NCBI RefSeq assembly: GCF_030028105.1
Contig: NC_092384.1
Coordinates: forward strand, 3,639,665-3,703,664
Reading direction: 5' to 3'
DNA length: 64,000 nucleotides
Origin: Mobula birostris
Taxonomy: Eukaryota
Below, one piece after another: positions 9,052 through 64,000 of this stretch. A program made the translations under genes and the position numbers. The notes beneath the pieces were generated by a model. That model saw only the letters and a list, made by a program, of their open reading frames with translations. It was not told where the DNA came from and ran no database searches. How positions within the stretch are numbered: position 1 is the stretch's first letter; every line of letters begins with the position of its first letter.

Positions 9052-9069
9052 TGACGTCAAAGTGAAACC
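9052..9069 (+). promoter_or_regulatory. CRE palindrome TGACGTCA overlapping an IRF-like AAAGTGAAACC, upstream of copy A leader
   Basis: Motifs read directly, ~150 bp upstream of ATG 9206. A CRE-like motif sits at the equivalent position in copy B. Confidence 0.45.
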
Positions 9070-9205
9070 AAGATGCAAGGGTTGTGCAGTCTATTTGCAA
9101 AACCATTTCTTACACGACCCTCGAAAAAGCTTCTCATCACTGTGCTATGTGATTGAACATTTAAAATACAGTTACTACGGTCTGATTTCATCAAATTTAT
9201 TGAAA

Positions 9206-9260
9206 ATGCATAGATTTCATTAGCTGCTTAATCTCTGCGTCCTGCAGATTGTGTACACAG
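9206..9260 (+). pseudogene. Leader exon of NKp30-like gene copy A (premature TAG at codon 6)
   Basis: ATG CAT AGA TTT CAT TAG CTG...TAC ACA G|GTATGT. Same 55-nt length and same donor as the copy B leader. Confidence 0.8.
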
Positions 9261-9505
9261 GTATGTATACAATTCCATCGTTGATCTAGAATAACGTGTT
9301 GTGAGATATTCAGAAATTGTTTGTGACAAGCTGTTGCCCATGAAGTAAACCGCAGATTTGTTATTTTAAATTGATTTACTTTACTCACAGTCGAATCGAT
9401 CCATTTCAGTCACAGTGATATAATATATGCATATTTTATTTTTAATAATTTTGTCAATAAAGCCAACCATTATGCTCTGATAACGATTGTTTTTCATTCT
9501 GACAG

Positions 9506-9825
9506 TTGTTGACAGGGCCTCGTTCACAGTGCGCCAGACTCCTGGGCAGGTGACTAAGTCAGAGGGTGCAAATGTGTCAATTTACTGCACCGACCCAGTC
9601 TGCGCTCAGAACACAGCGGTGACTGTTTGTTCGTGGACAGCGGGACAAAAACGATACTCAGGTGCTTCTGCAGACAGAAGGATGAGTATTATAACTTCAG
9701 AGCAAGGTTCTGCCGAATTCCATATCTTCGGGGTGAGATTCGGTGACTCTGGAATCTATTATTCCAGTGTGAGAGACTGAACAAGAAAGACTCCCAAGGC
9801 AAGGGCACGAGTGTTATTGCACACG
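9506..9825 (+). pseudogene. VJ-type Ig V exon of NKp30/NCR3-like gene copy A (pseudogene)
   Basis: Acceptor ttttcattctgacAG. About 86% identical to 61913-62233 (manual count). Lesions: C-strand Trp to Ser, F-strand YYC to YYS, TGG to TGA stop (9778-9780), 1-nt deletion before GxGT, donor GT to AT (9826). Confidence 0.9.
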
Positions 9826-10616
9826 ATAATTCTCAATCGTCGTGTTTTAAACAAATGCAACTTCTAAATTAAACGGAACGCCTTAGGTATTGATAATGTA
9901 CAATAAGAGACCACCTCTCAACCCACAACAGTATTCTTTCTTTCAGGTTTGAATAACCACTGTTTACTGTTGGTGGAACAGTAAAATCTCGTAAAGAATA
10001 TTGTTCTCTAATTTCAAGTAATTTTATGCTCCTTTATATCCGGAGATATAATTCCTGTGATGTACATGTGAAGAAGGACTTTATGTCGGTAGATTGGCAG
10101 TTAATGGAATAGAATGTTACATGTGCTAACTGAAATCATTCAATCAGATTCGACACCTGTGAGTTACAGATGATGACGTGCCCTTCGTAAGTTACGAGTT
10201 CAGACATTACTTGCAGAATATTAAATTGATTCTGCAAAAAGTTCGAGTGCTTTGCCGGCGTATACGACGAATAAACCCTTCTCGGGATTCCAACCGGGAA
10301 CAGATGTCAATTGTAACCGACGTCTCGATGGCATACTCTACCATTCTTGGAGAATCCGAGAAGAGTTTATTTGGAAACTCGAGTCTGCCTGTCCCATTGC
10401 AAATAGAAACAATGAATAAATGTTTGTTGTGTGTATTTAAATAATTACCGAATGCAGAACGCATTAACTGCTAAACAGAATCAGAATCAGAATATCACCG
10501 GCATTTGTCGGGAAATTTATTAACTTACCGGCACCAGTTCAATGTTAAGCACAATAGAACATAATAATGTAAGAAAAAGAGAAAATAAATCACCAGTGAA
10601 TCATATATACGTGAGG

Positions 10617-10812
10617 TGTTGTTCAGTCGTTAAGTCGAGTCCGATTCTTCGTGACATCATGGACCAGGTGGTCTATAGCTTTTTAATGGCAGGATAGGGA
10701 AGTAGATTGCCAGGCATTTGTTCCGCGCATATATTGCTGCAGCCCCGCTGGACCCGGCTGGGTTTGAACTCAGTTCTATCCGCCTTGAAGTCCAGTGCTA
10801 ATGCACTGAGGT
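10617..10812 (-). mobile_element. tRNA-derived SINE with RTE-like 3' tail
   Basis: Minus strand: A-box-like CTCAGTGCATTAG, B-box GTTCAAACCC, tail AATCGGACTCGACTTAACGACTGAACAAC resembling RTE/BovB 3' ends. Paralog at 63026-63232. Confidence 0.65.
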
Positions 10813-10814
10813 AG

Positions 10815-11600
10815 TGTTCATTGGTTTATTATCCATGCGGAATCGGATGGCAGAAAGGAAGTAAAAGTTCTTTGAATCGCTGACTGTGTGCCTTCACGCT
10901 TCTGTACCTCTTTCCTCACGGTAATAAAGAGAAAAGGACATATCCCTGGTAATGTAAGTCCTTAATGATGAACGCAGCCCTCCCGAGACACTGCTACTTG
11001 AAGGTGTCTTGGATACTAGTACTCATGATAGAACTGACTCATTTTGTAACTTATTGTAGCTTACTTCGATCCAGTACAGTAATCGCTCCCCAGCATACCA
11101 GACAGCGATGCAACCTGTCAAAATGCTCTCCTGGTACATCTGTAGAAGTTTTCGAGTGTCCTAGGTGACAAACCGAATCTCCTTAAACTTCTAATGAAAT
11201 ACAGACAGTATCTTACCCCCATTATAGCAACGTCGATATGTTAGGACCAGGTTAGATCCTCAGAGATATTTTCACCCAGGAACTTGAAATTTCCCACTCT
11301 CTCCAAATTTGAGGATTGATTTATGATTCCTCCTCCTATTGTTTCTGAAGTCCTTGGTCAACTTTCTCGTCTTACTGACGTTGAGTAAAAGGTTGTTGCT
11401 GCAATTCCACTCAGCTAGCTAATATCACTCTCTGCTGTACATCCTCACCTTTCTATCTGAGATTCTGCCAACAATTGTTGTATCATTACCAAATGTATTC
11501 ATGACATTTTAGCTATTCCTACCAAATAGCCATGGATATAGCGAGAGTAGAGAAGTGGGCTAAGGACACATCCCACAGATGCACCAGTGATGATCCTCAG
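10815..11600 (-). mobile_element. Old Rex1/Babar-type LINE 3' fragment (shared with copy B)
   Basis: Similar to 1905-2560 and collinear with 63235-64000. Confidence 0.75.
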
Positions 11601-29204: not shown

Positions 29205-32030
29205 AATAGACAATAGACAATTGGAGCAGCAGTAGGCCATTCGGCTCTTCGAGCCAGCACCGCCATTCACTGTGATCATGGCTGATCATCCAGAGTCAAT
29301 ATTCAGTTCCTGTCTTATCTCCTTAAACTGTGATTCCGCTATTTTTAAGAGGTCTGTCCATCTCTTTCCTAAAAGCATCCAAAGACTTGGCCTCCACGGC
29401 ATTCTGGGGCAAAGCATTCCATATATCCACCACTCTCTGGGTGAAAAAGTGTTTCCTCAACTCCGTTCTAAATGGCCCTTTCCTTATTCTTAAACCGTGG
29501 TCTCTGGTTCAGAACTCACCCATCAGCGGGAACATGCTTCCTGCCTCCAGCGTGTCCAATCCCTTAATGATCTTATATGTTTCAATAAGATCTCCTCTCA
29601 GCCTTCTAAATTCTACAGTAAACAATTCTAGTCGTTCCAACCTTTCGACATATGACAGTCAGGCCATCCCGGGAATTAACCTTGTGAACCTCCGCTGTAC
29701 ACCCTCAATAGCAAGAAAGTCCTTCCTCAAATTTCGAGACTAAAACTGCACACAATTCTCCAGGTTTGGTCTTACAAGGGCCCTGTACAGCTGCAGAAGG
29801 ACCTCTTTGCTCTTAAGATCTCGTTGTACTTCTCCTTATCCTAACTTGACTCCATTTAGATAATAATCTGCCTTCCTGTTCTTACCACCAAAGTGGATAA
29901 CCTCACATTTATCCACATTAAACTGCATCGTCCATGCATCTGCCCACTCACCCAGCTTGTCCAAGTCACCCTGTATTCTCATAACATCCTCCTCACATTT
30001 CACACTGCCACCCAGCTTTGTGTCATCGGCAAATTTGCTAGCGTTACTTTTAATTCCCTCATCTAAATCAAAATATATATTGTAAACAGCTGCGGTCCCA
30101 GCACTGAACCCTGTGGTATTTCACTGGTCACCGCCTGCCATTCCGAAAGGGACCCATTAATCGCTAATCTTTGTTTTCTGTCAGCCAGCCAATTTTCAAT
30201 TCGTGTCAGTACTCTGCCCCTAATACCATGTGCCCTAATTTTGCAGACTAATCTCCTATGTGGGACTTTATCAAAGGCTTTCTGAAAGTCCAGGTACACT
30301 ACATCCACTGGCCCTCCCTTGTCAATTTTCGTAGTTACATCCTCAAAAAATTCCAGACGATTAGTCACGCACGATTTCCCCTTCGTTAATCCATGCTGAC
30401 TCGGACCGATCCAATTACTGCTATCCAGATGTGTCCTGATTTCATCTTTTATAATTGACTCCAGCATCTTTCCCACCACTGACATCAGGCTAACCGGTCT
30501 AATAATTCCCTGTTTCCTCTCTTCCTCCCTTCTTGAAGAGAGGGACAACATTAGCCACCCTCCAATCCACAAGAACTGACCCTGAATCTGTAGAACTTCG
30601 GAAAATGATTACCAATTCGTCCACCATTTCTAATGCCACCTCATTAAGTACCATGGGATGCAGGCCATCAGGTCCCGAGGACTTATCAGCCTTCAGACCC
30701 AACAGTCTATCCAACACCATTCCCTGCCTAATATAAATTTCCTTCTGTTCAACCATTGCCTTAGGTCTTTTTGGCCACTATTATATCTGGGAGATTGTTT
30801 GTGTCTTCCCTAGTGAAGACAGATCCAAATTACCAGTTCAACTCGTCTGCCATTTCCGTGTTCCCCATAATAACTTCACCCATTTCTGTCTGCAAGGGCC
30901 CAATTTTGGTCTTAACTATGTGTTTTCCTTTTCACATACGTAAAGAAGCTTTTACTATCCTCCTTTATGTTCTTGGCTAGTTTACCTTCGTACCACATTT
31001 TTTTCTCTGCGTATTGCCTTTTTAGTTACCTGCTGTTGCTCTTTAAAAGTTCCCAAATCCTCCGGCTTCCCACTCATCTTTGCTATGTCATACTTCTTCT
31101 CTTTTATTTTTATACTGTCAATTACTTCCCTTGTCAGCCACGGCCTCCCCTTACTCCCCTTAGGATTGTTCTACCTCTTTGGAACGAACTGATCCTGCAC
31201 CTTCCGCATTATTCCCAGAAACACTTGCCATTGCTGTTCCATTGTCGTTCGCTGCTAAGGTATTGTTCCATTGAACTTTAGCCAGCGACTCCCTCATAGC
31301 ACCATAGTGCCCGTTGTTCAACAGTAACACTGGCACTTCCAAGTTTCCCTTCTCCCTCTCAAGTTGTAGATTAAAACTTATCATATTATGGTCACTACCT
31401 CCTAATGGCTCCTTTACCTCGAGGTCCCTGATCAAATCCGGTTAACTGCAGAACAGTAAATCTAGAATTGCCTTCTCTCTGGTAGGCTCCAATACAAGCC
31501 GTTCTAAGAATCCATCTTGGAGGGACTCCACATACTCCCTTTTTTGGGGTCCAGTACCAACCTAATTCCTTCGGTCTACCAGCATGTTGAAATCCCCCAT
31601 AACAACTGTAGCATTACCTTTGCGACATGCCAATTTTAACTCTTGATTCAACTTACACCCTACATCCAGACTACTGTTTGGGAGCCTGTAGATAACTCAA
31701 TTTAAGGTATTTCTACCCTTAGAATTTCTCAGTTCTATCCATACTGACTCTACGTCTCCTGAATCTATGTCCCCCCTCGCAACAGGGCGGGACATAGAAT
31801 CATTCCTCACCAAAAACACCCCGCCCCCTCTGCCCATCAGTCTGTCCTTTCGATAGGACGTATAACCTTGAATGTTCATTTCCCAGGCCCTGTCCACTTG
31901 AAGCCATGTCTCTGTTATTCCCACAACATCATACTTACCAATTTCCAACTGTGCCTCAAGCCCATCCACTTTATTTCTTATACTCCGTGCATTCATATAT
32001 AGACTATGTATAATAATTGTTGAGCCCATT
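29205..32030 (-). mobile_element. CR1 LINE ORF2 (APE + RT) with 3' tail
   Basis: YMNARSIRNK...GITETWL (31697-32029), QHGLTKGKSCVTN...YLDFQKAFDKVPH...PQGSVLGPQLF (30063-30572) and tail CAATAGACAATAGAC at ~29205. Confidence 0.92.
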
Positions 32031-37974: not shown

Positions 37975-40900
37975 AAACATAGATACACAGAAAATCTACA
38001 GTAAAATACAGGACCTTCGGCCTCCAAAGTTATGCCGAACATGTCCCTACCTTAGAAATTACTAGGTTTACCTATAGTCCTCTATATTTCTAAGCACCAT
38101 ATACCTATCCAAAAGTCCCTTAAAAGATCCTATTGTATCCGCCTCCACCACTGTTGCCAAAGCCCCTGCCACACACTCACCACTCTCTGAGTGAAAAAAA
38201 AAAACTTACCCCTGACATCTCCTCTGTACCTGGTACCAAGAACCTTAAACCTGTGTCCTCTTGCCACAACCATTTCAGCCCTGGGAAAAAGCCTCTGACT
38301 ATCCACAAATCAATGCCTCTCATCATCTTCTATAACTTTATCAGGTCACCTGTCAACCTCCGTCACTCCAAGGAGAAAAGGCGGAGTTCACTCAAACCAG
38401 TCTTATAAGGCATACAACCCAGTCTGGGCAACATTGTTGTAAATTTCCTCTGCACCCTTTCTATGCCTTCCACATCCTTCCTGTAGTGAGCTGACCAGAA
38501 CTGAGCACACTATTACAAGTGGGGTCTGATCAGCGTCCTATATAGCTGCAAGATTACCTCTCGGCTCCTAAATTCAATTACTCGATGGATGAAGGCCATG
38601 GGTGTCATTATACACCAGTCATTGACAGTGGGCATGCAGGTACAGCAGGCGGTGAAAAAGGCGAATGGTATGCTGGCATTCATAGCAAGAGGATTCGAGT
38701 ACAGGAGCAGGAAGGTACTACTGCAGTTGTACAAGGCCTTGGTGAGACCACACCTGGAGTATTGTGTGCAGTTTTGGTCCCCTAATCTGAGGAAAGACAT
38801 CCTTGCCATAGAGGGAGTACAAAGAAGGTTCACCAGATTGATTCCTGGGGTGGCAGGACTTTCATATAATGAAAGACTGGATGAACTAGGCTTGTACACG
38901 TTGGAATTTAGAAGATTGAGGGGGGATCTGATTGAAACGTATAACATCCTAAAGGGATTGGATAGACTAGATGCAGAAAGATTGCTCCCGATGTTGGGGA
39001 AGTCCAGAACGAGTGGTCACAGTTTGAGGATAAGGGAGAAGCCCTTTAGGACTGAGATTAGGAAGAACTTCTTCACACAGAGAGTGGTGAATCTGTGGAA
39101 TTCTCTGGCACAAGAAACAGTTGAGGCCAGTTCATTGGCTATATTTAAGAGAGAGTTAGATATGGCCCTTGTGGCTACGGGGATCAGTGGGTATGGAGGG
39201 AAGGCTGGTGCAGGGTTCTGAGTTGGATGATCAGCCATGATCATAATAAATGGCGGTGCAGGCTCGCAGGGCTGAATGGTCTACTCCTGCACCTATTTTC
39301 TACATTTCTATGTTTCTATACACCGTGAGCCTTCTTAACCACAGAGTCAATCTGCGCAGCTGCTTTGAGCGTCCTATGGATTCAGACCCCAAGATTCCTC
39401 TGATCATTCACACTGCCAAGAGTATTAACATTAAAGCTTTATTCAAAATGAACCACTTCACACTTATCTGGGTTGAAATCCATCTGCCACCTCTCAGCCC
39501 AGTTTTGCATCCTATCAATGTCCAGCTGTAACCTCTGACAGCCCTTCACACTATCCACAACACCTCCAACCTTTGTGTCATCAGCAAATTTACTAACCCA
39601 TCCCTCCACTTCCTCATCCAGGTCATTTATAAAAATCACGAAGAGTAAGGGTCCCAGAACAGATCCCTGAGGCACTCAACTGGTGACCAACCTCTATGCC
39701 GACTATGACCCGTCTGCAGCGACTCTTTGCCTTCTGTGGGCAAGCCAGTTCTGGATCCACAAAACAATGTCCCGTTGGATCCCATGCCTCTTTACTTTCT
39801 CAATAAGCCTTGCATGGGATAACGTGTCAAATGCCTTGCTGAAATCCATATACACTACATTTACTGCTGTTCTTTTATCAACGTGTTTAGTCGCATCTTC
39901 AAAAAATTCAGTCAGGCTCGGAAGGCATGACCTGCCCTTGACAAAGCCATGATGACTGTTCCTAATCATATGATACTTCTCCAAATGTTCATAAGTTATG
40001 CCTCTCCGGATCTTTTCCATCAACTTAAGCTCATTGAGCTTCAAATCCCTCCTCCTGCACAAAATAAATACAGAACAAAACGGAACAGGCACATCTACGC
40101 TGAAGTCCCTCCTCCCGCACAAAGAAAGGAGCAAAACGGAGCAAGCTCATCGACCTCCAAATGCATCCTCCCGCAAAAGAAATTTTCCACTCATGTTCCC
40201 CTTAAGATTTTCACCCTTCACCCTTAACATGACTGTTGGTTGTAGACCCACTCAACCTCAGTGCAAAAAAAGCCTGCTTGCATTTACCCTACCTATAACA
40301 AGCAACATTTTGTATACCTGTATCAAATCGTCTCTCAGACTTCTAGAGGAATAAAGTCCGAACCTATTCCATCTTTCCAAATAACTCACGTCCTCCGGTC
40401 CCGCAACATCCTTCGAAATTTTCTTTGTACTCATTCAACCTTATTTACAGCTTACCTTAACGCAGATGACCAAAAGTACCCACAATACTCCACATTAGAC
40501 CTTTCTAATGTCTTATATAACAACAACACAATATTCCATCTCCTGTAGTCAGTTAGTTTTTATTTATGAAGGCCAACGTGTCAAAAGCTTTTTAATGACC
40601 ATCTAGCTCTGACTCCACTTTCCATGAATTATGGACCTATATTCACAGATTCCTTTGCCCCACCGCACTTCTCGGTGTTCTACCCTTCACTGTGTAAGAC
40701 CTAACCTGGTTAGTCCTACAGAAGTGCAACACCTTGCACATCACTGCATTAAATTCCGTCTGTATTTTTCAGCCTAATTTGCAGCCGGTACCGATCGTGC
40801 TGTAATCTATTCCTCGCTGTCCATTGCACTACCTTTTTAGTGTCATCTGCAAATTTCCTGTTCGGCGGCCCGCAACGTGCATTACCGCCCTGCTCAGGAG
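37975..40900. mobile_element. CR1 LINE fragments, head-to-head and nested (38585-39320 plus strand; rest mostly minus)
   Basis: 210-aa ORF 38589-39221 RPHLEYCVQFWSPNLRKDILAIEGVQRRFTRLIPG. Minus ORF 39439-39675 PQGSVLGPLLF...KFADDTKVGG. Confidence 0.88.
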
Positions 40901-41469: not shown

Positions 41470-43385
41470 TTATTTAAAGCAACGACTGGAAAGATACCCT
41501 AGCAGGGATGACAGTGGAACAACAACGGCAGGTATTTCTGGGAATAATACAGAAAGTGCAGGATCAGTTCATTCCAAAGAGGAAGAAAGACTCTGACGGG
41601 AGTAAGGGGCGACCGTGGCTAATAAGGTAAGTCGAGGACAGTATATGAGTAAAAGAGAAGATAAATAACACAGAAAAGATGAGCAGGAAGCCAGAGGATT
41701 GGGAAACTTTTTAAAGAGCAACAGAAGATAACTGAAAAGGCAATACGGGGAGAAAAGATGAGGTACGAAGTTACGCTAGCCACGAATATATAGGAGGATA
41801 GTAAAAGCTTCTTTAGGTATGATGGTCTGCATCCAAGGGTACTTACGGAGGTGGCTCTAGTAATCGTGACGCATTGTTAATCATTTTCCAATGTTATATA
41901 GATTCAGGATCTGTTCCTGTGGATTGGAGGGAGGCTAATGTTACCCACTTTTTAAGAAAGAAAGGGGAAAGAAAACAGGGAATTGCATACCAGTTAGAGT
42001 GACATTACTGGTGGAGAAGATGTCGGAGTCAATTATCAATGATGAACTGGCTGCACATTTGGATAGCAGTAATAGGATCTGTCCGAGCCAGCATGGATTT
42101 AAGTAGGGAAAATCACGCTTCACCAACCGTCTGGAAATTTTTGAGGATGTAACTATGAAAATAGACAAGGGAGAGCCAGTGTATGTAGTTTACCTGGGCT
42201 TTCAGAAAGCCTTTGATAAGGTCCCACACTGGAGATTAGTAGGCAAAATTGGAGCACATGGTATCGGGGTAGGGTAATGACCTGGATAGAAAATCGTTTG
42301 GCAGACAGAAAACCAAGAGTAGGGATTAACTGGTCCCTTTCAGAATGGCAGGCAGTGACTAGTGGGGTACCGCAAGGCTCGGTGCTGGGATCGCAACTAT
42401 TTACAATGCACATTAATGATTTAGATGAAGGGATTAAAAGTAACATTAGCAAGTTTGCAGATGACATAAAGCTGGGTGGCAGCGTGAAATTTGAGGAGAA
42501 TGTTATGAGAATGCAGGGTGACTTGGACAGTTCACTGACTTGGCAGATGCATGGAGGAAGAAGCTTAATATGGATAAATATGAGGTTATCCAATTTGGTG
42601 GCAAGAACAGGAAGGCAGATTACTATCTGAATGCCGTCAAGTTAGGAAAAGGGGAAGTACAACGAGATCTAGTTGTTCTTGAATATCAGTCACTGAAAGT
42701 GAGCATGCGGGTACAGCAGGCAGTGAAAAACAAAAAACAACTAATAGCATTTTGTCCTTCATCACAAGGGGAATTGACTATAAGAGCAAATAAGTCCTTC
42801 TGCATTTCTTAAAGGCCCTGGTGAGACCACATCTGGAGTATTCTGTGAAGTTTTGGTTTCCAAATTTGATGAAGAACATTCTTGCTGTTGAGGGAGTGCA
42901 GCATACGTTCACGAGGTTAATTCCCAGGATGGCGGGACTGTCATATGTTGAAAGATTGGAGCGACTGGGCTTGTATACACTGGAATTTAGAAGGATGAGA
43001 GGGGACCCGATTGAAGCATATAAGATTATTAAGGGATTGGACATGCTACGGGCAGGAAACATGTTCCCGATGTTGGGGTAATCCAGAACAAGAGGCTACA
43101 ATTTGAGAATAAGGGGTAGGCCATTTAGAAGGGATTTGAGGAAAAACGTTTTCAACCAGAGAGTTGTGGATCTGCGGACTGCTCAGCCTCAGAAGGCAGT
43201 GGAGGCCAATTCTCTGAATATTTTCAAAAAAGAGTTAGATGGAGCTCTTAAAGTTAGTGGAGTCAAGGGACATGGGGAGAAGGCAGGAACGGGGTACTGA
43301 TTGTGGATGATCAGCCATGATCACAGTGAATGGTGGTGCTGGCTCGCAAGGCCGAATGGCCTACTCCTGCACCTATTGTCTGTTG
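41470..43385 (+). mobile_element. CR1 LINE RT to 3' end
   Basis: VTSGVPQGSVLGSQLF...KFADDIKLGG (42277 ORF) and RPHLEYSVKFWFP (42821 ORF). Confidence 0.9.
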
Positions 43386-43609
43386 TCTATTGCAAATTTT
43401 CAACAGAGGGCGCACACCCCTCTGTTCGTTTATTATTTGAATATATGTTCAAAGGAGGAAAAAGTTATCTTAGTTTCGGACACTACCATGCCTGCCCTGG
43501 CAGCTCATTGTAAATAATACACAAATTTATGTTTCAAAGTAACCCACACGGATGTCCATCAATATTTTCTTCCATGTAGAATTGGTTTAGCTGTAGATGG
43601 CAGCGCTTG

Positions 43610-45200
43610 GTATTTCAGGCCTTCCCGAAGATAAATCCAAGGAAGGCGACGGGCCCATATGGCGTCCCAGGACGGGTTTTCCGGGCCTGTGCAAGTGAGC
43701 TAGCTGGAGTGTTTGCTGACATCTTGAACTGCTCCTTGCTTCAGTCTAAGATCCCCTCGTGTTTTAAGAAGGCAACGGTAATCCCAGTGCCGAAGAAGAG
43801 TAAGGTGGCATGACTGAATGACTATCGACCTGTGGCTCTGACATCAATTGCTATGAAGCACTTCGAGCGATTAGTTATGGCACACATCAACCACAGCCTA
43901 CCGGTCAACATCGACACTTTGCGATTCGCCTACCAGAGCAACAGGTCAACCGCAGATGCCATCTCTCTGGCCCTACATTCCTCCTTAGAACACCTGGAGA
44001 GCAAAGAGGCATATGAAAGGCACATTTTCATTGACTACTGCTCTGATTTTAATACCATCATCCAAATAAACTGATTCATAAGCTCCGGAACCTGGGCCTT
44101 AGCCCTCAGAACTGCAGCTGTATCTTCAACCTCCTCACAGACACAACGCAGGCTGTACAAATAGTGGCAAGCTCTCCTCTACAATCACTCTGAGCGCTGA
44201 TGCCCCACAAGGCTGTCTACTCAGTCCCCTGTTGTACTCACTGTACACGCATGATTGCGGGGCCAAGTTGCCATCGAATTCAATATATAAGTTTGCTGAT
44301 GACACAGCAATTGTAGGCCGTATCTCGGTAATGGTGAGTTTGAGTACAGAGAGGAAATTAAGAACCTGGTGGCATAGTGCGAAGACAATAACCTATCCCT
44401 CAACGTCAGAAAGACGAAGGAATTGGCTGTTGACTTCAGTAGGAGTAGCGGACCGCACGGCCCAATTTACATCGGTGGTGCGCAAGTGGAACAGGTCAAA
44501 AGCTTTCGGTACCTCGGGGTCAATATCACAAATGACCTGACTTGGTCCAACCAAGCAGAGTTCACTGCCAAGAAGTCCACCAGCGTCTTTACTTCCCGAG
44601 AAAACGAAAGAAATTTGGCCAGTCCCCTAAAACCCTCACTAATTTTTATAGATGCATCGTAGAAAGAATTCTGCTGGGGTGCATCACAACCTGGTATGGA
44701 AATTGTCCTGTCCAAGACCGGAAGAAGCTGCAGAAGATCGTGAACAGGGCGCAGCACATCACACAAACCAATCTTCAATCCTTGGACTCACTTTACACTG
44801 CATACTGTCGGAGCAGTGCTGCCAGGATAATCAAGGACACGACCCACCCAGCCAACAGACTTTTCGTCCCTCTTCCCTCCGGGAGAAAGCTCAGGAGCTT
44901 GAAGATTCGGACGGCCAGATTTGGGAACAGCTTCTCTCCAACTGTGATAAGCCTGCTGAACGGATCCTGACCCGGATCTTGGCCGTACCCTCCAAATATC
45001 CGGACCTGCCTCTCGGTTTCCTTTTTTACACTACCTTACCTTCCATTTCCTATTTCCTATTTATGACTTATAACTTAAAATTTAAGTATTTACTATCGAT
45101 TTGTATTCCAGGGTGCGGGAAGCGCAGAATCAAATATCGCAGTGATGATTGTACGTTCTAGTATCAATTGTTTGGCGACAATAAAGAATAAAGTAAAGTG
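43610..45200 (+). mobile_element. 5'-truncated Rex1/Babar-type LINE
   Basis: [27 protein letters not shown]...[38 protein letters not shown] and a 3' UTR ending AATAAAG. Confidence 0.9.
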
Positions 45201-53079: not shown

Positions 53080-56000
53080 AGTGGTTCAGGGTAGGAGTGG
53101 AGCTTTCAGGCTTTGGCTCGAAATGCTTCGATGCGCCTGCTCCAAGTGAGGTAAGGCCGGGTAAGTTCCTTTAATTAATTTAATTAAATTAGGAGTAGGT
53201 AATGGAGGCAGCAGTTAGGGCAGTCGAGTGCTTCGTATGCAGTATGTGGGAAGTCAGGGACAACACATTTGTCCCTGATGTCCACACCTATAAAAGGTGC
53301 ATTCAGCTGTGGCTCCTGACAAACCGAGTTAGGGAACTGGAGCTGGAGCAGGATGAACTTCGGATTATTCCTGAGGCATAGGTAGAAATAGACAGGAGTT
53401 TCTGGGAGATAGTCATCCCTAAACTCAGGCGGTAGGAAGCAGGGTGACTGTCAGAAGAGGGAAGGGGAATAGACAGAATGAGCAGAGCACCTTTCTGACC
53501 GTTCCCATCTATAATAAGAAAAACGTTTTGGATACTATTGGTGGGGACGACCTACCAGGGACAAGTTGTAGTGGTCACTTCTCTGGCACAGAGACTGGAC
53601 CCTCATCTCAGAAAAGAAAACGGTAAAAGAGGAGAAAAGTAGTGATAGGGGATTAGATAGTTAGGGGGACAGATAAGACCTTCTTTGGGAAAAATCGAGA
53701 ATCCCGGATGTTCTATTGCCAACCCTCCCCCCCCCCCGCCCCCCGATGCCAGGGTCCGCGATATCTCTGCTCAGGTTCTCGGTATTCTCAGGAGGGAGGT
53801 TGAGCAGCCAGATGTCGTGGTCCATGTAGATTCAATTATGTGGATAGGAAGAAGGAGGAGGTCCTGCAAAGACATTATAGGGAGTTTGGTGCAAAGTTGA
53901 AGGACAGGACCGCCAGGCTTGCAATCTCAGGATTGCTACCCGTGCCACTTGCTAATGAGGCTAGAAATAGGAAGAGAATGCAGCAAAATACGTGGCTAAG
54001 GAGATGGTGCAGGAGGGAGGGCTTCATGTTTTTGGATAATTGGGTTTTGTTCCACGGAAGGTGGGACCTGTTCCGACGGGACGTTTTGCACCTGAAATAG
54101 AGGGGGACTAGCATACTTTTGGGTAGGTTTGCTAGTGCTTCTCGGGAGGGATTAAACTAGATTTGCAAGGGAAGGGGATCCAGAGTGTTAGAACAGATAG
54201 TGAGGTGGAGGATGATAAAGGTCATTTGAGGACTGCATGTATGGACAGTAATCAAAGGTTTCTACGTGATAGAAAAGTTATCAGGTGCATGTGTTTTAAT
54301 GCAAGGTGCTTTGCAGATAAGGCAGATGAGCGTAGGGCGTGGATTGACAACTGGGATTACGACATTATTGCTATTAGTGTGACTTGGTTGCTGGAGGGGC
54401 AGGACTAAGAGCTAAATGATCCGTGGTTCCATTGTTTCAGACGTGACGGGAGCGGGGGGAGATGAAATGGTGAGGATTGGCATTACTAGTCAAGGAAAAT
54501 ATCACAGCTGTGCGTAGACAGGACAGCCCCGAGGGCTTGTCTACAGAGGTCATGTGGGTGGAGTTGAGGAACGGAAAAGGTGTGACCACACTAATAGGGT
54601 TGTATTATAGACCGACCAATAGTCAGAGAGATTTGGAGGAGCAAATCTGCAGAGAGATAGCAGACTGATGTAAGAAACAGAAAGTTGTAATATTAGGGGA
54701 TTTCAGATTTCCATATATTGACAGGGACATCCACACTGTGAAAGGGTTAGATAGCGTGAAGTTTGTTAAATGTGTTAGAAAACTTTTCTAAATCAATATT
54801 TAGAGGTACATACAAGAGATAGGATGCAATACTTGATCCGTTATTAGGTAACCAGACAGGTCAGGTGACAGACGTATGTTTAGGCGAACATTTTGGGTCC
54901 AGTGAACATAATATTATTGGTTTCAAGTTAATTATGGATAAGGATAGGTCCGATCCTCGAGTTGAGGGTCTAAATTGGAGAAGGGCAAATTTTGTGCAAT
55001 GAGAAAGGATCTAGGTAGAGTGGATTTGGAAGAGTTGTTTTCTGACAAGGATGTGTTCAGTAAGTGGAAGGTCTTCAAAAGCGGGATTTTGAGAGTGCTG
55101 AGATTGCATGTTCCTGCTAGGATTAAAGGCAAAGTTAACAGGCATAGAGAACCTTGATTTTCAAGGGATATTGGCGATCTGATTAAGAAAGAGAGAGAGC
55201 TGTATAGCAGGTATAGGCAACAAGGAACAAAAGAGGTACTTGAAGAGTATAGAAAATGTAAGAAAATACTAAAGAAGGAAATCAGGAAGGCAAAAAGAAG
55301 ACATGAGGTTGCTTTGGCAGATAATGTGAAGCTAAAGCCGAGGGGTTTCTACAAGTATATTAAGAGTAAAAGGATAGTAAGTGACAAAATTGGTCCCCTA
55401 GAAAATGAGAGTGATCGTTTATGTGTAGAGTCTACGAGATGGGGAGGATCTTAAACAGTTTTTTGCATCAGTATTTACTCAGAAAACTGGCATAACGAAT
55501 ATGGAAGGAAGGGAAACAAGCAGTCGTGTCATAGAACATATAGAGATTAAAGAGGAGGAGGTGATTGCTGCCTTTCAGCGAATAAAGGTAGATAAATACC
55601 CCGGGACTCGCATGATATTTCCTCGGATCTTGAGAGAGACTAGTGTAGAAATTGCAGGGGCCCTAGCACAAATATTTAAAATGTCCTTAGCCACCGGAGT
55701 GATGCCAGAGGATTGGAGGTTAGCTCATGTTGTTCCATAGTTTTTTTTTTAAAAAAAAGCTCCAAAAGTAAACCAGGTAATTACAGGCCGGTAAATCTGA
55801 CATCATTATTGGAAGATGCTCTGAGAGATCGCATATACAAGTACTTGGACAGCCAAGGGCTGATTAAGGATGGTCAGCATGGTTTCGTAGGTGGTAGATC
55901 CTGTTTAACGAAACTTGTAGAGTTTACTGAGGAGGTTACCGAGAAAGTAGTGCTGGGCCTATTGTTGTTAGTTGTCTATATCAATGACCTATATAATAAT

Positions 56001-56970
56001 GTGGTAAATTAGATCAGCAGGTTTTCTTACGACACTAAGATTGGAGGCGTTGTGGCAGCGAGGAAGGCTTTCAAAGCTTGCAGAGGGATCTGGATCAACT
56101 GGAAAAAAAGGGCCGGGAAATGGCAGATGGAATTTATGCAGACAAGTGTGAAGTGTTCTGTTTTGGAAGGACAAATCAAGATTGGACATACACAGTAAAT
56201 GGTAGGGCACTGAGGAGTGCGGAGGAACAAAGTGATCTGGGAGTTCAGGTACATAATTCACTGTAAGTCGCAGGTAGACGTCACAGGCGGCGTCACAGGT
56301 AGACAGGGTTATAAAGAAGGCTTTTGGCATCCTGGCATTCATAAATCAAAGTATTGAGTATAGGAGGTAGGATGTTATGGTGAGGTTGTATAAGACATTG
56401 GTGAGGCCAAATTTGGAGTACTGTGTTCAGTTCTGGTCACCTAACTCTAGGAAGGATATCGGTAAGATTAAAAGAGTGCAGACAGGATTCATTAGGATGT
56501 TGCCGGGTCTTCAGGAGTTGAGTTATAGGAAAAGATTGAAGAGGTTACTACTGATTTTCCTTGGAGCGTAGAAGAATGAGGGGGGGGGGGATTTGATTGA
56601 GGTTTACAAAAATTATAAGGGGTTTAGGTAGGGTAAATGCGGAAAGGCTCCTTCCACTTAGATTAGGAGATATAAATACGTGAGGCCATGGCTTTAGGGT
56701 GAGAGGAGAAAGGTTTAGGGGGAACATTAGGGGCTACTTTTTCATTCAGAGAGTGGTGGGAGTGTGAACAAGCTGCCATCTGACATGGTAAATGTGGGCT
56801 CGCTCTTAAGTTTTAAGATTAAATTGGCCAGGTACGTGGATGGCAGTGGTCTGGAGGGTTATGGACTGTGAGCAGGTCAATACGACTAGCGGATAAAGTT
56901 TCGGCACAGTCGAGAAGGGCCGAATGGCCTGTTTGCTGTGTTGTAGTGTTCTATGGTTCTATGGTCTATG
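53080..56970 (+). mobile_element. Nearly full-length CR1 LINE (5' UTR, ORF1 zinc finger + esterase, ORF2 with internal RT deletion, tail)
   Basis: ATG 53202 MEAAVRAVECFVCSMWEV (CxxC), SGNH motifs, CFNARCF..KADE APE start (~54290), RPNLEYCVQFWSP and a CTATGG tail at ~56950-56970. RT is shortened near 55950. Confidence 0.88.
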
Positions 56971-59880: not shown

Positions 59881-60916
59881 TACTGGAATCATAATATCGA
59901 CAGTCTGTGGTAACAGACGTGTGCCTGTGCAGTCGGACTACTGCTTAACAATAAACATGACTACATCGCGCGCCATTTGTGGTTATTTTAAGCGTACCGA
60001 TTGCGAGTTTTAAAGATAAGTTAGTCATTGTGCTGTATCTGATATAAGCATCTAGGAGTATCCTCAGTTTAGCAAGATTTTAGTGCATTGAGCTCCGCTA
60101 CACAAACTATTTTACTTCACTATTTAGACTTTACAGAAACGTCTAGATTTCAGTCATCACTGTTTCGTGCGGTATTGCGCTTAAATATGTCAATAACTAT
60201 TATTTGACCTTGGCGAATATTATCCTGCCGTCCCAGGAAGCTGAGGATAGCAGAGAACATCTTAGGGCCTGGAAGGTGAATCGCAAGTGTAATGAGGCCT
60301 CTCGGTCGCCGTGGGAGAATCGAACTGAATGATACTGTATGATTCTGCATGATGCTGTATGATTCCATACTTAAATGACTCTTGTGCAATCTTTAATCTT
60401 CGCATACCTCCCCAATGTCTACACGTACGACCCGGCAAAACAGTTTGGTGAATATTCACTACGCTCATTTAACCTCAAGTATACAGATCAAGGACCGATG
60501 AAAATTCCTGCATTTTTTTTTAACATTGCTCTCATACTAAAGCCCCCGCAAAATCCCAAGATATGTAGTCGTTTACTTTATTTGTGGTTTTAGGGATGTG
60601 TGCACAAAGATACCTGGGTTCAGGTTCAACGAAGGCACAGTTCCCAATCCATTGGTCATCGCCTACCAACATGCCTCTGTATTTTAAGTTTTCGAATTCT
60701 GAGCATGAAGCAACTCCTAATAAATACTTCACATTGTTCGCTATGATAACTGAAATCTAATCGTGTGTTATTTTTACAAACGTCCAAGCTATAAACTGAC
60801 TGAACCCTTCGGAGAATCCAAAGGTTGTTATACCCCATCACACCTCACAGCACACCCCTATCTGCACCACCTAACAGATAATTATAAATAATAAATACTT
60901 AATTTGCATGCTTCTT

Positions 60917-60953
60917 CATCTCTCTTTCCCCCTCCCTCTCCCCCTCTCTCTCC

Positions 60954-61005
<52 letters not shown>

Positions 61006-61012
61006 CTCTCTC
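60917..61012. repeat. Polypyrimidine/(CT)n microsatellite
   Basis: Seen directly, ~0.6 kb upstream of the copy B ATG. Confidence 0.95.
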
Positions 61013-61490
61013 CACCACCCCACTATCTATTTTGCTGTTCTGCTCCGAACGTTAATCTTTGGAATAAAATATCAGAGTCATGCGTTTGAAAGCCCAAAAT
61101 TAGGTGCTTGGGATTCTTCATTTTCGGCTCATTACCTCCACTTAGTTTTTGATAGAGTTTCCTTTTCCTCTATCATTTGCACTCATCCTTTATGCGACAA
61201 CATTTATCTAAAGCTTCTGCGAACTCCTAGGAAGGCAGAGGTAATAGGTTCAATTGTTCTGCCTGTTCCTTTTTACTCTAATGCTGTGACTGCATGTTTT
61301 TTTTGGTTTTTCAAATAGACACTGAAACCACAGCGTTGTATCTTTCCGCCGAGTTACTCTCGCATTCGATTTCCATTTCTCAATGTGTTTCATAACAACT
61401 GAGAAAGCCAATGGAAATTCTGACCTGATTGTAATATCAGATACGTCCAGCCAGCGTGCAACTTTAAACGGTTTTTTTTGTTCGCCGTTG

Positions 61491-61498: not shown

Positions 61499-61626
61499 TT
61501 TGAAACAAAGTCATCAGTTGCAACAGCTTTTCCATCAGGCACCCTTAAAGCTTCCTTTCATTGTGTTATTTGACTGAGCCGCTGCCAGACAGTTACCACT
61601 GTTCGATTTTATTGCTTCTGTTCAAA

Positions 61627-61681
61627 ATGCAAAAATTTGATCTGCTGCAGTATTTCTTAGTCCTGCAGATTACCTACACTG
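61627..61681 (+). CDS. NCR3-like: Leader (signal peptide) exon of NKp30/NCR3-like gene copy B
   Basis: MQKFDLLQYFLVLQITYT G|GTATGT. 55 nt, phase 1, splices in frame to 61913. Confidence 0.8.
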
Positions 61682-61912
61682 GTATGTATACGCTTCTCTC
61701 GTTAATACTCATTAACGGAGTGGGGGCAGGGAATATCTTCATGAGGTATGTTTTGCTCAATTTGTAAATCGCAGTTTAGATATTTACAATTGATTTATTT
61801 TAATCACAAGTAAATCGACCTTATTTTCTTTACAGTGACAGTTTATATATTTTTTTTCTGGTCAATAATGCCGATCATTATGCTCTGATAACGAATGTTT
61901 TCATTCTGACAG

Positions 61913-62233
61913 TTGCTGACAGGGCCTCGTTCACAGTGAACCAGATTCCTGAGCAGGTGACGAAGGCAGAGGGTGAAAATGTGTCAATTTACTGCACCTA
62001 CCCAATCTTCGCTCAGAACTCACTGGTGGATGTTTATTGGAGGAAAGGGGAACAAAAACAATTTATAGACGCCACTGCAGACAGAAGGATGAGGATTATA
62101 ACTTCGGAGCAAGGTTCTGCCGAATTCCATATCCTCGGGGTGAGCTTCGGTGACTCTGGAATCTATTATTGCAGTGTGAGTGACTGGACAAGAAAATTTT
62201 CCAATGGCAATGGCACGAGCGTTATTGTACACG
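61913..62233 (+). CDS. NCR3-like: Intact germline-joined VJ-type Ig V exon, NKp30/NCR3-like receptor (gene continues beyond window)
   Basis: ttttcattctgacAG | VADRASFTVNQIPEQVTKAEGENVSIYCTYPIFAQNSLVDVYWRKGEQKQFIDATADRRMRIITSEQGSAEFHILGVSFGDSGIYYCSVSDWTRKFSNGNGTSVIVH G|GTAAAT. Has B-Cys, C-Trp, DSGxYYC and GxGT in one 321-nt phase 1-1 exon. GNGTSVIV resembles NKp30 GNGTRLVV. Orthology not established. Confidence 0.85.
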
Positions 62234-63025
62234 GTAAATCTCACTCGGTGTGTCTTAGACAAATGCAACTATTAAATTTAGCGGAGCGCTTTAGATCTTG
62301 ATAAAGTCGAAAAAGGGACTGCCACTCTACCCACAATAGTATTCTTCCGTTCGGGTTTGCATAACCACTCTTTACCGTTGGTGGAACAGTGTAATCCCCG
62401 AAAGAACATTGTTTTCTCATTTCAAATAACTTTAAGCTCCTTTTTTATCTGGAGATTTAATTCATGGGATGTACATCTGATGAAGCACGTTAAGTCCGTA
62501 GATAGGCAATTATTGAAATAGAATGTTACATGTGTTAACTGAAATTATTTCATCCGATTGTAGACCTGTGAGTTGCAGCTAATGACGTGTCTTTCGTAAG
62601 CTAAGAGTTCAGCGATTACCTGCGGAATATCAAATCGATTCTGGAAAAAGTTCTAATGCTTGGTCAGCATATACAACGAATAACCGCTTCTTGGGTTTCC
62701 AGCCGGGTACAAATATCAATTGTAACCGATGTATCGATTGCATACTCTGCCATTCTTAGAAAAGCCCGAGAAGAGTTTATTTGGAAACTCGAGTCTGTCT
62801 GTCACTTTGCAAATGGAAAAAAAGAATAATGTTTGTTATATGTATTTAAATAATTCGCGAATGGAGAACTTCTAAACAGAATTAACTTCTAATCAGATTC
62901 AGAATCAGTATTAAAATCATCGGCATACGTCGTGAAATTCGGTAACGTACCGGCAGCAGTACAATATAAAGCACAATAAAACGTAACAATATAGGAAAAA
63001 GATAAAATCAGTAAATAATTTAAAG

Positions 63026-63232
63026 TTGTCGTTCAGTCGTTAAGTCTTTAAGTCGAGTTCGACTCTTCGTGACGTCGTGGACCATAGGGTATACAGGGTG
63101 TTCATGGCGAGATACGGAATTAGATTGCCAGGCATTTGTCCCGCGCAGATACTGCTGCTGTCATGGCTGGTACCCGGCTGGGTTTGAACTCAGTTCCATC
63201 GGTCTTGGAGTCCAGTGCCGATGCACTGCGGT
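63026..63232 (-). mobile_element. tRNA-derived SINE with RTE-like tail (paralog of 10617-10812)
   Basis: Collinear, same B-box GTTCAAACCC. Confidence 0.65.
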
Positions 63233-63234
63233 AG

Positions 63235-64000
63235 TGTTCATAGGTTCATTATCCATGAGAAATCGGATAGCAGAGAGGAAGAAATATTTCTTTGAATCGC
63301 AAAATGTGTCATCACGCTTTTATACCTCCTTCCTCACGATTAGAATGAGAAGTGGAAATGTCCTGGGTAATGGAAGTCCCTAATGATGGACGCAGCCCTC
63401 CCGAGACACTGCTACTTGAAGGTGTCATGGATACTATGGATGCTAGCACCCATGATAGAACTGACTCGTTATATAACTTACTGCAGCTTCTTTCGATCAG
63501 TACAGTAGTCGCTCCCCAGTATGCCAGGCGGTGATGCAACCTGTCAAAATGCTCTCATGGTACATGTTTAAAAGTTCTCGAGGCTCTTAGGTGACAAACC
63601 AAATCTCCTCAAATTTCCAATGAAATAAAGACACTATCTTGCCCCCATTATAGCAACGTCGATATGTTAGGACCAGGTTAGTTCCCCAGAGATATTGACA
63701 CCAAGGAACTTGAAATTGCCCACTCTCTCCAAATTTGAGGATTGGTTTATGACTCCTCTTCCTACTGTTTCTGAAGACCTCGGTCAACTTTCTTGTCTTA
63801 CTGACGTTGAGTGAAAGGTCGTTGCTGCAACTCCACTCAGCTGGTTAATATCGCTGTCTGCTGTACGTCCTCCCCTTTCCATCTGAGATTCTGCCAACAA
63901 TTGTTGTATCATTACCAAATGTATTGCTGACATTTTAGCTATTCCTAGCTACATAGCCATGGATATAGAGAGAGTAGAAAATTGGGCCAAGGGCACATTC
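63235..64000 (-). mobile_element. Old Rex1/Babar-type LINE fragment (paralog of 10815-11575)
   Basis: Collinear with copy A at an offset of ~52.4 kb. Confidence 0.75.

What the first reader, a model, noticed from the sequence alone, without database searches (positions are those of the whole stretch)
61627..62233. Intact non-rearranging VJ-type (NKp30-like) immune receptor gene
Seen: an in-frame leader plus a single V exon carrying both the V core (Cys, Trp, DSGIYYC) and a J-like GNGT motif, ending at a phase-1 donor with no RSS. Established: single-exon VJ domains define NKp30/NCR3 and related receptors regarded as close to the pre-RAG antigen-receptor ancestor, and cartilaginous fishes carry NKp30 homologs. 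Inference: this is a functional member of an expanded NKp30-like family, probably poorly annotated in this repeat-rich region.
Basis: partly seen in the sequence, partly recalled or inferred. Interest (0 to 1): 0.8.

Follow-up and report, generated by a model that had tools for sequence, protein, structure and literature searches.

The report
Manta VJ-C1 inhibitory receptor gene start
These are the first two exons of a real, transcribed giant manta ray gene for a cell-surface immune receptor with a ready-joined antibody-like tip, one antibody-type constant domain and an "off-switch" tail. It belongs to a large shark-and-ray receptor family that databases predict under misleading names, and it is not a true NKp30 gene.

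Summary
The window holds a split leader (61627-61681), a GT..AG intron, and one V exon (61913-62233) with Cys, Trp, DSGIYYC and a J-like GNGT motif. The exon ends at a phase-1 donor and there is no RSS. RNA contigs from two runs carry the exact 61681/61913 junction. They continue from 62233 into a C1-set exon or straight into the transmembrane exon.

The gene is from Mobula birostris and spans about 19 kb, running off the window. NCBI already has two predicted isoforms. One has 361 aa (leader-VJ-C1-TM-tail, "tapasin-related protein-like"). The other has 268 aa (C1 skipped, "uncharacterized").

The transmembrane segment is uncharged. The 118-aa tail carries a canonical ITIM (LMYACV) and an ITSM (TEYAGI).

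Relatives retrieved with names are all chondrichthyan. They include short-tail forms with Arg in the membrane segment and 88-96% identical ectodomains, which is the paired-receptor pattern.

NKp30 membership fails. A genuine shark NKp30-type V hits human NKp30 at 58 bits. The manta V does not list NKp30 among its best 60 PDB matches, and it has a C1 domain and an inhibitory tail. The V fold alone resembles NKp30 about as well as CD8b, CD79b and TCR V.

An 81%-identical partial copy at 9126-11571 is a dead pseudogene. This scan has already found the same kind of gene on other DNA of this genome.

The parts
61604..61626 (+). 5' untranslated part of exon 1, as far as RNA contigs reach. The true transcription start is not determined.
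   Evidence: Contigs of X1 and X2 begin at 61604 and run into the leader (table 8). Contigs cannot show a true start.
61627..61681 (+). Leader exon coding part: ATG plus 18 codons plus the first base of a split codon (MQKFDLLQYFLVLQITYT). Phase-1 GT donor at 61682.
   Evidence: Identical to residues 1-18 of gene models P0001 and P0151. The junction is seen in RNA contigs.
61682..61912 (+). Intron 1 (231 nt, GT..AG), the split-leader intron.
   Evidence: Skipped in contigs of X1 (77 and 104 nt on the two sides) and X2 (table 5).
61913..62233 (+). Single exon encoding the end of the leader and the whole VJ domain (106 aa; Cys27, Trp42, DSGIYYC, SNGNGTSVIVH). Ends in phase 1.
   Evidence: V-set E 1.9e-10; 100% match to P0001 residues 20-125; AF2 model pLDDT 88.3; no RSS.
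62234..64000 (+). First 1.77 kb of intron 2. The C1, transmembrane and cytoplasmic exons lie beyond the window end.
   Evidence: The gene spans about 19 kb. Loose ends after 62233 read VPPVPLKITE (C1 exon) and GSRDKFILIL (TM exon). tblastn finds no C1, TM or tail exon in the window.
62140..62181 (+). Two cryptic GT donors inside the V exon (62139|GTGAGC and 62175|GTGAGT). RNA contigs join them to the C1 exon out of frame, and a stop follows after 5 codons.
   Evidence: loose ends of X1 at 62139 and X3 at 62175; translation FRRCR*.
9126..11571 (+). Partial duplicate of 61547-63998 (81% identical): pseudo-leader 9206-9260, pseudo-V exon 9506-9825 and about 1.7 kb of intron 2. A dead V pseudogene with no downstream exons in the window.
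   Evidence: stop in the leader, Trp42 lost, Cys86 to Ser, TGG to TGA, 1-bp deletion in the J part, donor GT to AT. No RNA contig of its own.

Best explanation
The stretch is exons 1 and 2 (split leader plus single-exon VJ domain) of an expressed Mobula birostris gene. The full product is a type I membrane receptor: leader, non-rearranging VJ-type V domain, one C1-set Ig domain, an uncharged transmembrane helix, and a 118-residue cytoplasmic tail. The tail has an ITIM-like motif (PSYADL), a canonical ITIM (LMYACV) and, 23 residues further, an ITSM (TEYAGI). A second transcript skips the C1 exon.

The gene belongs to a large multigene family for which named searches returned only sharks, rays and chimaeras. 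The family contains long-tail ITIM/ITSM forms. It also contains short-tail forms with an Arg in the membrane segment and nearly identical ectodomains.

Inferred mechanism (not shown). The VJ tip binds a still unknown ligand on another cell or a pathogen. The tail tyrosines are then phosphorylated and recruit tandem-SH2 phosphatases (SHP-1/SHP-2), which damp activation of the expressing leukocyte. The Arg-bearing short forms would pair with an acidic adaptor and signal the opposite way, as in SIRPa/SIRPb and other paired receptors.

The gene is not an NKp30 orthologue or family member. Its V domain is a separate lineage of the VJ-type IgSF domains.
For: Shown:
- Exon structure and intact frame.
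- V-set and C1-set E 2.5e-13.
- 100% identity to two NCBI gene models of M. birostris.
- The leader-V junction, the V-C1 junction and the V-TM junction are all present in RNA contigs. The same runs leave a 4-kb control stretch almost bare, so they are RNA and not DNA.
- No RSS.
- Uncharged TM, ITIM LMYACV and ITSM TEYAGI.
- The tail tyrosine motifs are conserved in register across 27 family members.
- All 13, 31 and 24 named hits of three searches are chondrichthyan.
- Short-tail Arg-in-TM forms have 88-96% identical ectodomains.
- The V-C1 AF2 model has pLDDT 88.5. It matches V-C1 proteins, with SIRPa/b giving the best TM by query, 0.74-0.76.
- The C1 part matches MHC class II membrane-proximal domains at Z 14.8, rmsd 1.2.
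- The family V profile scores members at 83-158 bits. Reptile multi-VJ domains score up to 68 bits, NKp30-type 34-42 bits and SIRP-type 35-37 bits.
- In the V tree the family forms its own branch, 96/89 support.

Inferred from established knowledge of ITIM/ITSM receptors: SHP-1/2 recruitment and inhibitory output. Adaptor pairing of the Arg forms is also inferred.
Against: - No ligand, expressing cell type or phosphatase binding is known. The tissue of the RNA runs is coded and unknown.
- The first tail tyrosine (PSYADL) is not a canonical ITIM. The second tyrosine conserved in sharks is lost in Mobula.
- 'Chondrichthyan-specific' rests on word-indexed searches. A turtle protein (P0119) nests weakly inside the family in the V tree (80/79), and notes from this scan say related families reach amphibians or turtles.
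- The short forms carry an acidic or polar motif (IIVDH) as well as the Arg, so their adaptor is a guess.
- The RNA evidence is from assembled contigs, not raw reads.
Confidence: 0.8

Rival explanations
1. [quoted passage not shown] PRARP are the non-rearranging VJ-C1-TM-ITIM genes described from bony fish to birds by Fu et al. 2019. This would refine the best explanation rather than contradict it.
For: The architecture is the same as I recall from that paper's abstract (VJ, C1, TM, ITIM). That is my own knowledge: the paper is not held. PMC10751288 and PMC11599192 list PRARP among joined-VJ genes. One turtle protein nests in the family tree.
Against: No PRARP sequence could be obtained, so nothing was tested. 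Profile and single-sequence searches with names returned no bony-vertebrate protein.
Confidence: 0.2
2. It is a SIRP-family gene: a co-orthologue of SIRPa with one C1 domain instead of two, as NCBI's automatic name for many members suggests.
For: The layout is a VJ domain followed by a C1-set domain. The tail has several ITIM-type tyrosines, and paired short-tail forms exist. SIRPa/b give the best TM by query (0.74-0.76, 23% identity) for the V-C1 model. SIRPa 2wng aligns collinearly over V and C1 with the family profile.
Against: A true SIRP-type V from a snake (P0053) finds SIRPa at 68 bits. No SIRP chain is among the best 60 PDB matches of the manta V or of the family V profile. SIRP-type V domains score only 35-37 bits on the family profile and sit on a separate long branch. 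No tetrapod SIRP was retrieved by full-length searches. SIRPg reaches only Z 13.6 at rmsd 6.9.
Confidence: 0.1
3. One reading: a member of an expanded NKp30 (NCR3)-like family.
For: The gene has a single-exon VJ domain with a split leader and no RSS, and a GNGT J motif as in human NKp30 (the alignment printed shows gNGTrlvv). NKp30 has the best TM by query (0.79-0.80) for the V-only model, and Z 13.8 at 25% identity. The C1-skipped isoform has a V-stalk-TM layout.
Against: - NKp30 is absent from the best 60 PDB sequence matches, while a real shark NKp30-type V hits it at 58 bits.
- Identity to that shark V is 29-31%.
- The manta V sits on a separate branch in the tree.
- There is a C1 exon, an uncharged TM and an ITIM/ITSM tail instead of a basic TM residue and a short tail.
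- The structural match is tied with CD8b, CD79b, TCR Va, Ig kappa V and CD7.
Confidence: 0.05
4. It is a B7/butyrophilin-type ligand (V-C ectodomain), as the automatic names 'NCR3LG1-like' and 'CD276 homolog' for relatives imply.
For: The two-domain model superposes well on B7-H6, PD-L1, PD-L2, CD276 and butyrophilins (Z 15-17).
Against: These scores reflect the V-C two-domain shape, at 15-25% identity. The V has a J-type GxGT G strand, and its nearest V-only matches are receptor or antigen-receptor V domains. The tail has ITIM/ITSM motifs and paired Arg-TM forms, which is receptor-like.
Confidence: 0.03
5. It is a germline-joined immunoglobulin light chain or TCR V gene.
For: VNAR, TCR Va and Ig kappa V are the best sequence matches of the V domain. 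It is followed by a C1-set exon.
Against: The identities are low (best 30.6 bits). The C1 exon is followed by an uncharged TM and a 118-aa ITIM/ITSM tail. There is no RSS anywhere near. The family is not one of the Ig/TCR loci.
Confidence: 0.01

Closest known systems
[quoted passage not shown]
   Same: Non-rearranging single-exon VJ domain, a C1-type domain, a transmembrane region and a cytoplasmic ITIM. Expressed as an ordinary germline gene.
   Different: PRARP was described from bony fish to birds as one or two genes. This is a large chondrichthyan multigene family with paired short-tail forms and an ITIM+ITSM tail.
SIRPa / SIRPb (signal-regulatory proteins)
   Same: VJ-type V followed by C1-set domain(s). 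Inhibitory tail with ITIM-type tyrosines in one form, and a basic TM residue with a short tail in the paired form. Best two-domain structural match (TM 0.74-0.76).
   Different: One C1 domain instead of two. The V sequence is not SIRP-type. No evidence for CD47-type ligand binding.
NKp30 / NCR3
   Same: Split leader, single-exon VJ domain, GNGT-type J motif, no RSS. V fold TM 0.79-0.80.
   Different: NKp30 has no C1 domain. It has a basic TM residue and a short tail and is activating. True shark NKp30-type V domains exist (P0034) and are clearly different in sequence.
UrIg / UrIg2 (PMC12227049)
   Same: Elasmobranch non-rearranging VJ exon with split leader, followed by C1-type domains. UrIg2 (9dmx) is hit by the family profile.
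   Different: UrIg has 3 C domains and UrIg2 has 9-11. They are disulfide-linked dimers. UrIg is secreted, and no ITIM is described for either in the passages I read. They are single genes, not a paired-receptor multigene family. The profile hit is generic Ig similarity summed over several domains.

Membership tests
NKp30 / NCR3 | Single-exon VJ-type V domain with split leader and no RSS | tested here: met
NKp30 / NCR3 | V sequence recognisably NKp30-type (as bona fide chondrichthyan NKp30-type V domains are) | tested here: not met
   The control P0034 hits human NKp30 as its top four PDB matches at 58 bits, with the next match at 35 bits. The manta V has its top match at 30.6 bits (VNAR), and NKp30 is not among its best 60. 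The family profile scores NKp30-type V at 34-42 bits against 83 bits or more for members. Separate branches in the tree.
NKp30 / NCR3 | Ectodomain of one V domain only, then stalk | tested here: not met
   The main isoform has a C1-set domain, E 2.5e-13, and the V-C1 junction is in RNA contigs. Only the minor C1-skipped isoform has a V-stalk-TM layout.
NKp30 / NCR3 | Basic residue in the TM, short tail, activating signalling through ITAM adaptors (established knowledge) | tested here: not met
   Uncharged TM. 118-aa tail with ITIM LMYACV and ITSM TEYAGI.
NKp30 / NCR3 | Linkage to the MHC (class III) | not testable with these tools
   No DNA beyond the window could be fetched. The eight MHC notes shown, of 53 that fit, all lie on other pieces of the genome, which is only a hint.
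SIRP | VJ-type V followed by C1-set domains and a TM | tested here: inconclusive
   V plus one C1. SIRPa has two C1 domains. Collinear profile match to 2wng, TM 0.74-0.76.
SIRP | SIRP-type V sequence | tested here: not met
   The control P0053 hits SIRPa at 68 bits. No SIRP chain is among the best 60 for the manta V or the family V profile. 35-37 bits on the family profile.
SIRP | Inhibitory ITIM tail, with paired activating forms carrying a basic TM residue | tested here: met
   (sequence motifs only; signalling not tested).
PRARP | Non-rearranging VJ - C1 - TM - cytoplasmic ITIM architecture | tested here: met
   The family definition is recalled from memory.
PRARP | Sequence or phylogenetic grouping with chicken, reptile, amphibian or fish PRARP | not testable with these tools
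   The paper is not held and no PRARP sequence was available. Named searches returned only chondrichthyan proteins.
Rearranging or germline-joined Ig/TCR | RSS-flanked or germline-joined V, with a C region of an Ig or TCR isotype | tested here: not met
   No RSS. The C1 is followed by an uncharged TM and an ITIM/ITSM tail.
UrIg / UrIg2 | VJ followed by three or more C1 domains | tested here: not met
   One C1 domain. The definition is from PMC12227049.

The most novel reading that the evidence does not exclude
The two-domain VJ-C1 membrane receptors of this family are surviving relatives of the two-domain VJ-C1 gene that Flajnik et al. (PMC12227049, Fig. 2 legend) postulate as the precursor of UrIg and of rearranging antigen receptors. 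On this reading, an antigen-receptor-shaped chain was first used as a germline-encoded paired inhibitory/activating receptor before the RAG transposon split a V exon.
Probability: 0.08. Interest if true: 0.75.

Novelty: new member of a known kind. Interest (0 to 1): 0.4.

Why it matters
Non-rearranging VJ domains are the raw material from which antibodies and T-cell receptors are thought to have arisen. Cartilaginous fish are the oldest lineage that has both. This gene shows that manta rays, like sharks and chimaeras, keep a large, expressed family of antigen-receptor-shaped (VJ-C1) chains wired to inhibitory, and apparently also activating, signalling.

Databases label these genes SIRPa-like, tapasin-related-like, B7-H6-like, MHC class I-like or Ig lambda-like. 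These labels would mislead comparative immunology. I found no paper on the family in the held library.

For this single finding the gain is modest. It gives a correct gene identity, transcript evidence for two isoforms, and a clean negative for NKp30 membership.

Tried and rejected
- Fetching DNA beyond the window for the downstream exons and neighbours failed because the file is too large. Synteny and MHC linkage could therefore not be tested.
- PDB profile searches with V-C1, V-only and C1-only alignments were dominated by multi-domain antibody, titin and pIgR chains. They could not rank single-domain families. The control searches were used instead.
- The ESM Atlas feature search gave only generic V-set clusters.
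- Rigid two-domain structure searches mostly reflect the V-C shape and the interdomain angle, so they do not discriminate between families.
- Papers on shark NKp30, PRARP and UrIg (PubMed 30770416, PMC3709836, PMC4594805, PMC10530332) are not held.
- A resemblance between the four tail tyrosines and SIRPa's four tyrosines is recalled from memory. It could not be tested, so it is given no weight.
- An RSS was searched for and not found.
- No complex prediction was run, because no binding partner is claimed.

Full report
**1. What is in the sequence**

An ATG at 61627 opens a 55-nt leader exon (MQKFDLLQYFLVLQITYT plus one base). It ends at 61681 before GTATGT. After a 231-nt intron, the acceptor cag|61913 opens a 321-nt exon. 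This exon finishes the leader and encodes a complete 106-residue V domain:
- Cys27 in ...NVSIYC...
- Trp42 in ...VYWRK...
- DSGIYYC (Cys86)
- the J-like G strand SNGNGTSVIVH

The exon ends in phase 1 before GTAAAT. Pfam calls it V-set (E 1.9e-10). A scan for a CAC-heptamer, a 12- or 23-bp spacer and a nonamer found nothing on either strand of 61500-62700.

**2. It is a real, annotated and transcribed gene**

An exhaustive protein search found a 268-aa protein that is 100% identical and uses the same leader-V splice (P0001). A named search identified it as 'uncharacterized protein isoform X2 [Mobula birostris]'. It also found its 361-aa sister, 'tapasin-related protein-like isoform X1' (P0151). 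The gene spans about 19 kb on an 86.2-Mb chromosome of GCA_030028105.1, so exons 3 onward lie beyond the window end. No DNA could be fetched for them.

Four public runs hold the exons. The runs are coded; three are of one study and organism, and the fourth is of another organism.
- Contigs of X1 and X2 skip 61681..61912 with GT..AG ends.
- Contigs of X1 and X3 continue after 62233 with letters that translate to VPPVPLKITE, the start of the C1 exon of P0151.
- A 777-nt contig of X3 continues with GSRDKFILIL, the transmembrane exon of P0001.
- X4 continues with VPPAP, as in the M. hypostoma orthologue.

As a control, the same runs leave 8600-12600 almost bare apart from short repeat-derived pieces. 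They are therefore RNA and not genomic DNA. Both isoforms are transcribed.

**3. The whole protein**

P0151 has this layout:
- leader (1-19)
- VJ domain (20-125)
- C1-set domain (Pfam E 2.5e-13, residues 132-205)
- short stalk
- uncharged transmembrane helix (FILILTGALAACGAIILVLLLLM)
- 118-residue tail with PSYADL (ITIM-like), LMYACV (canonical ITIM) and TEYAGI (canonical ITSM)

In an alignment of 27 full-length relatives, the tail tyrosine motifs are conserved in register. The second one is lost in Mobula. AlphaFold models of V-C1 and of V alone are confident (pLDDT 88.5 and 88.3). The C1 part superposes on MHC class II membrane-proximal domains at rmsd 1.2 (Z 14.8), so it is a true C1-set domain.

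**4. The family**

Three named searches returned 13, 31 and 24 hits (single sequences and a 27-sequence profile). All are from Mobula, Hemitrygon, Narcine, Heptranchias, Heterodontus, Scyliorhinus, Hemiscyllium, Chiloscyllium, Carcharodon, Cetorhinus or Callorhinchus. A cluster look-up added Mustelus. Their automatic names disagree wildly: SIRPa-like, SIRPb-like, tapasin-related-like, NCR3LG1-like, CD276 homolog, H-2 class I-like, Ig lambda-like, butyrophilin-like.

Most members have long ITIM/ITSM tails. Others end soon after a membrane segment that carries an Arg and a conserved IIVDH-type motif (P0160, P0173/4, P0011, P0022, P0071). Their ectodomains are 88-96% identical to long-tail neighbours of the same species. 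This is the signature of paired inhibitory/activating receptor families.

Within M. birostris, P0151 and its paralogue P0002 show a mosaic pattern that suggests 3' homogenisation:

| Region | Identity |
|---|---|
| V domain | 72% |
| C1 domain | 87% |
| stalk, TM and tail | 99% |

**5. Is it NKp30-like?**

Structure of the V domain alone says 'as much as anything'. In Swiss-Prot AlphaFold models, NKp30 gives the best TM by query (0.79-0.80, 23-24% identity). However, its E-values are within a factor of about two of CD8b and CD79b. TCR Va, Ig kappa V, CD7 and PILRa follow within roughly twenty-fold. Against solved chains, VNAR (Z 14.8), CD79b (14.0), NKp30 (13.8) and TCR Vd (13.5, 31% identity) are tied.

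Sequence says no.
- The manta V's best PDB match is a shark VNAR at 30.6 bits, followed by TCR Va and pIgR. NKp30 is not among the best 60, nor for the family V profile.
- As a positive control, the first V domain of a horn-shark protein from the same hit list (P0034, three V domains) finds human NKp30 as its top four matches at 58 bits. The next match is at 35 bits. Genuine chondrichthyan NKp30-type V domains therefore exist and are easy to recognise.
- The manta V is 29-31% identical to them.
- A snake SIRP-type V (P0053) likewise finds SIRPa at 68 bits.
- The family V profile scores as follows:

| V domains scored | Bits |
|---|---|
| Family members | 83-158 |
| Reptile multi-VJ receptor domains | up to 68 |
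| NKp30-type | 34-42 |
| SIRP-type | 35-37 |

- In a maximum-likelihood tree of 60 V domains, the family forms its own branch (96/89). P0151 sits next to its M. hypostoma orthologue. The NKp30-type and SIRP-type domains are on separate long branches. One turtle protein nests weakly inside the family. The tree is unrooted and lacks Ig/TCR references.

Add the C1 exon, the uncharged TM and the inhibitory tail, and NKp30 membership fails on three of four testable defining features. The GNGT motif is real and is shared with human NKp30 (alignment).

**6. Closest known kinds**

By architecture the best matches are two:
- PRARP (VJ-C1-TM-ITIM), recalled from the abstract of Fu et al. 2019. The paper is not held, and PRARP is listed among joined-VJ genes in PMC10751288 and PMC11599192.
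- SIRPa/b (VJ, C1 domains, ITIM tail, paired forms), which gives the best two-domain structural match.

UrIg and UrIg2 differ. They have three and nine to eleven C domains and form dimers, and in the passages I read of PMC12227049 no ITIM is described for them. I could not test PRARP orthology, and SIRP orthology of the V domain is not supported. I therefore file the gene as a new member of the known kind 'non-rearranging VJ(-C1) IgSF receptors with ITIM signalling', in a chondrichthyan family that the held literature does not describe.

**7. How it probably works (inferred)**

Ligand binding by the VJ tip leads to phosphorylation of the ITIM/ITSM pair. The pair is 23 residues apart, a spacing I recall as typical of receptors that bind tandem-SH2 phosphatases. 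SHP-1/SHP-2 would then be recruited and activation damped. The Arg-TM short forms would signal through an adaptor. Nothing of this was or could be tested here.

**8. The second copy**

Positions 9126-11571 duplicate 61547-63998 at 81% identity. The copy has these defects:
- a stop in the leader
- loss of Trp42
- Cys86 to Ser
- TGG to TGA
- a 1-bp deletion in the J part
- a GT to AT change at the donor

No C1, TM or tail exons follow it within the window. The only RNA contigs on it are those of the functional gene. It is a dead partial duplicate.

**9. Context from this scan**

All of these are unchecked AI notes.
- The adjoining window's reader described the same gene as a VJ-C1-TM-ITIM receptor (s1-145222).
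- More such genes are noted 258 and 315 kb upstream on the same chromosome (s1-145220, s1-145095).
- Follow-ups on other chromosomes reached the same kind of verdict for related genes (s1-145101, s1-145048, s1-145073, s1-145046).

The scan has therefore found this kind of gene before, on other DNA of this genome.

Noticed in passing
window 62139 and 62175: There are two cryptic donors inside the V exon: GG|GTGAGC, and TGCAGT|GTGAGT just after the conserved Cys. RNA contigs join them to the C1 exon. Both joins are out of frame and stop after FRRCR. The second lies exactly where a rearranging V gene would carry its RSS, but no RSS-like sequence is there.
   Followed up: partly
window 9126-11571: This is an 81%-identical partial duplicate (leader, intron, V exon and 1.7 kb of intron 2) decayed to a pseudogene. 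Its leader resembles the paralogue P0002 more than the gene at 61627.
   Followed up: yes
outside the window: proteins P0151 and P0002 of M. birostris: The paralogues show mosaic identity: V 72%, C1 87%, stalk+TM+tail 99% (143/145). This suggests gene conversion or recent exchange of the 3' exons. A scan note (s1-145952) mentions an orphan set of cytoplasmic exons 33 kb beyond the window end.
   Followed up: partly
protein P0034 (Heterodontus francisci; not in the window): This horn-shark protein has three tandem V domains. The one I searched (domain 1) is unmistakably NKp30-type (58 bits to human NKp30). The protein is auto-named 'protein turtle homolog B-like' or 'SIRP beta-2-like'. A multi-V NKp30 relative may itself deserve a look.
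   Followed up: partly
proteins P0003, P0014, P0024, P0036, P0042 (turtles, lizards, snakes; not in the window): The nearest non-chondrichthyan relatives of the V domain are reptile receptors with 2-6 tandem VJ domains. Several of them have ITIM/ITSM-like tails. They are auto-named NCAM2, FCRL5, titin-like or CEACAM1-like.
   Followed up: no
window 2677-6413, 19091-21249, 27876-28217, 30063-30572, 38589-40134, 42277-45161, 55713-56012: These stretches hold many broken ORFs that read like LINE-type reverse transcriptases (motifs such as YLDFQKAFDKVPH). The window is mostly retrotransposon debris between the two V copies. They were not scanned against Pfam.
   Followed up: no
window 60899-61089 and 3469-3606: A long (GA/CT)n microsatellite lies about 550 bp upstream of the leader exon. 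There is a 138-base run of N at 3469-3606, which was left untouched.
   Followed up: no
window 61912-62233, run X4 (organism B): Contigs of a second organism match the V exon at 90-97% and continue into a C1 exon reading VPPAP. That matches the Mobula hypostoma orthologue P0152, so the orthologue appears to be transcribed in a related species.
   Followed up: partly
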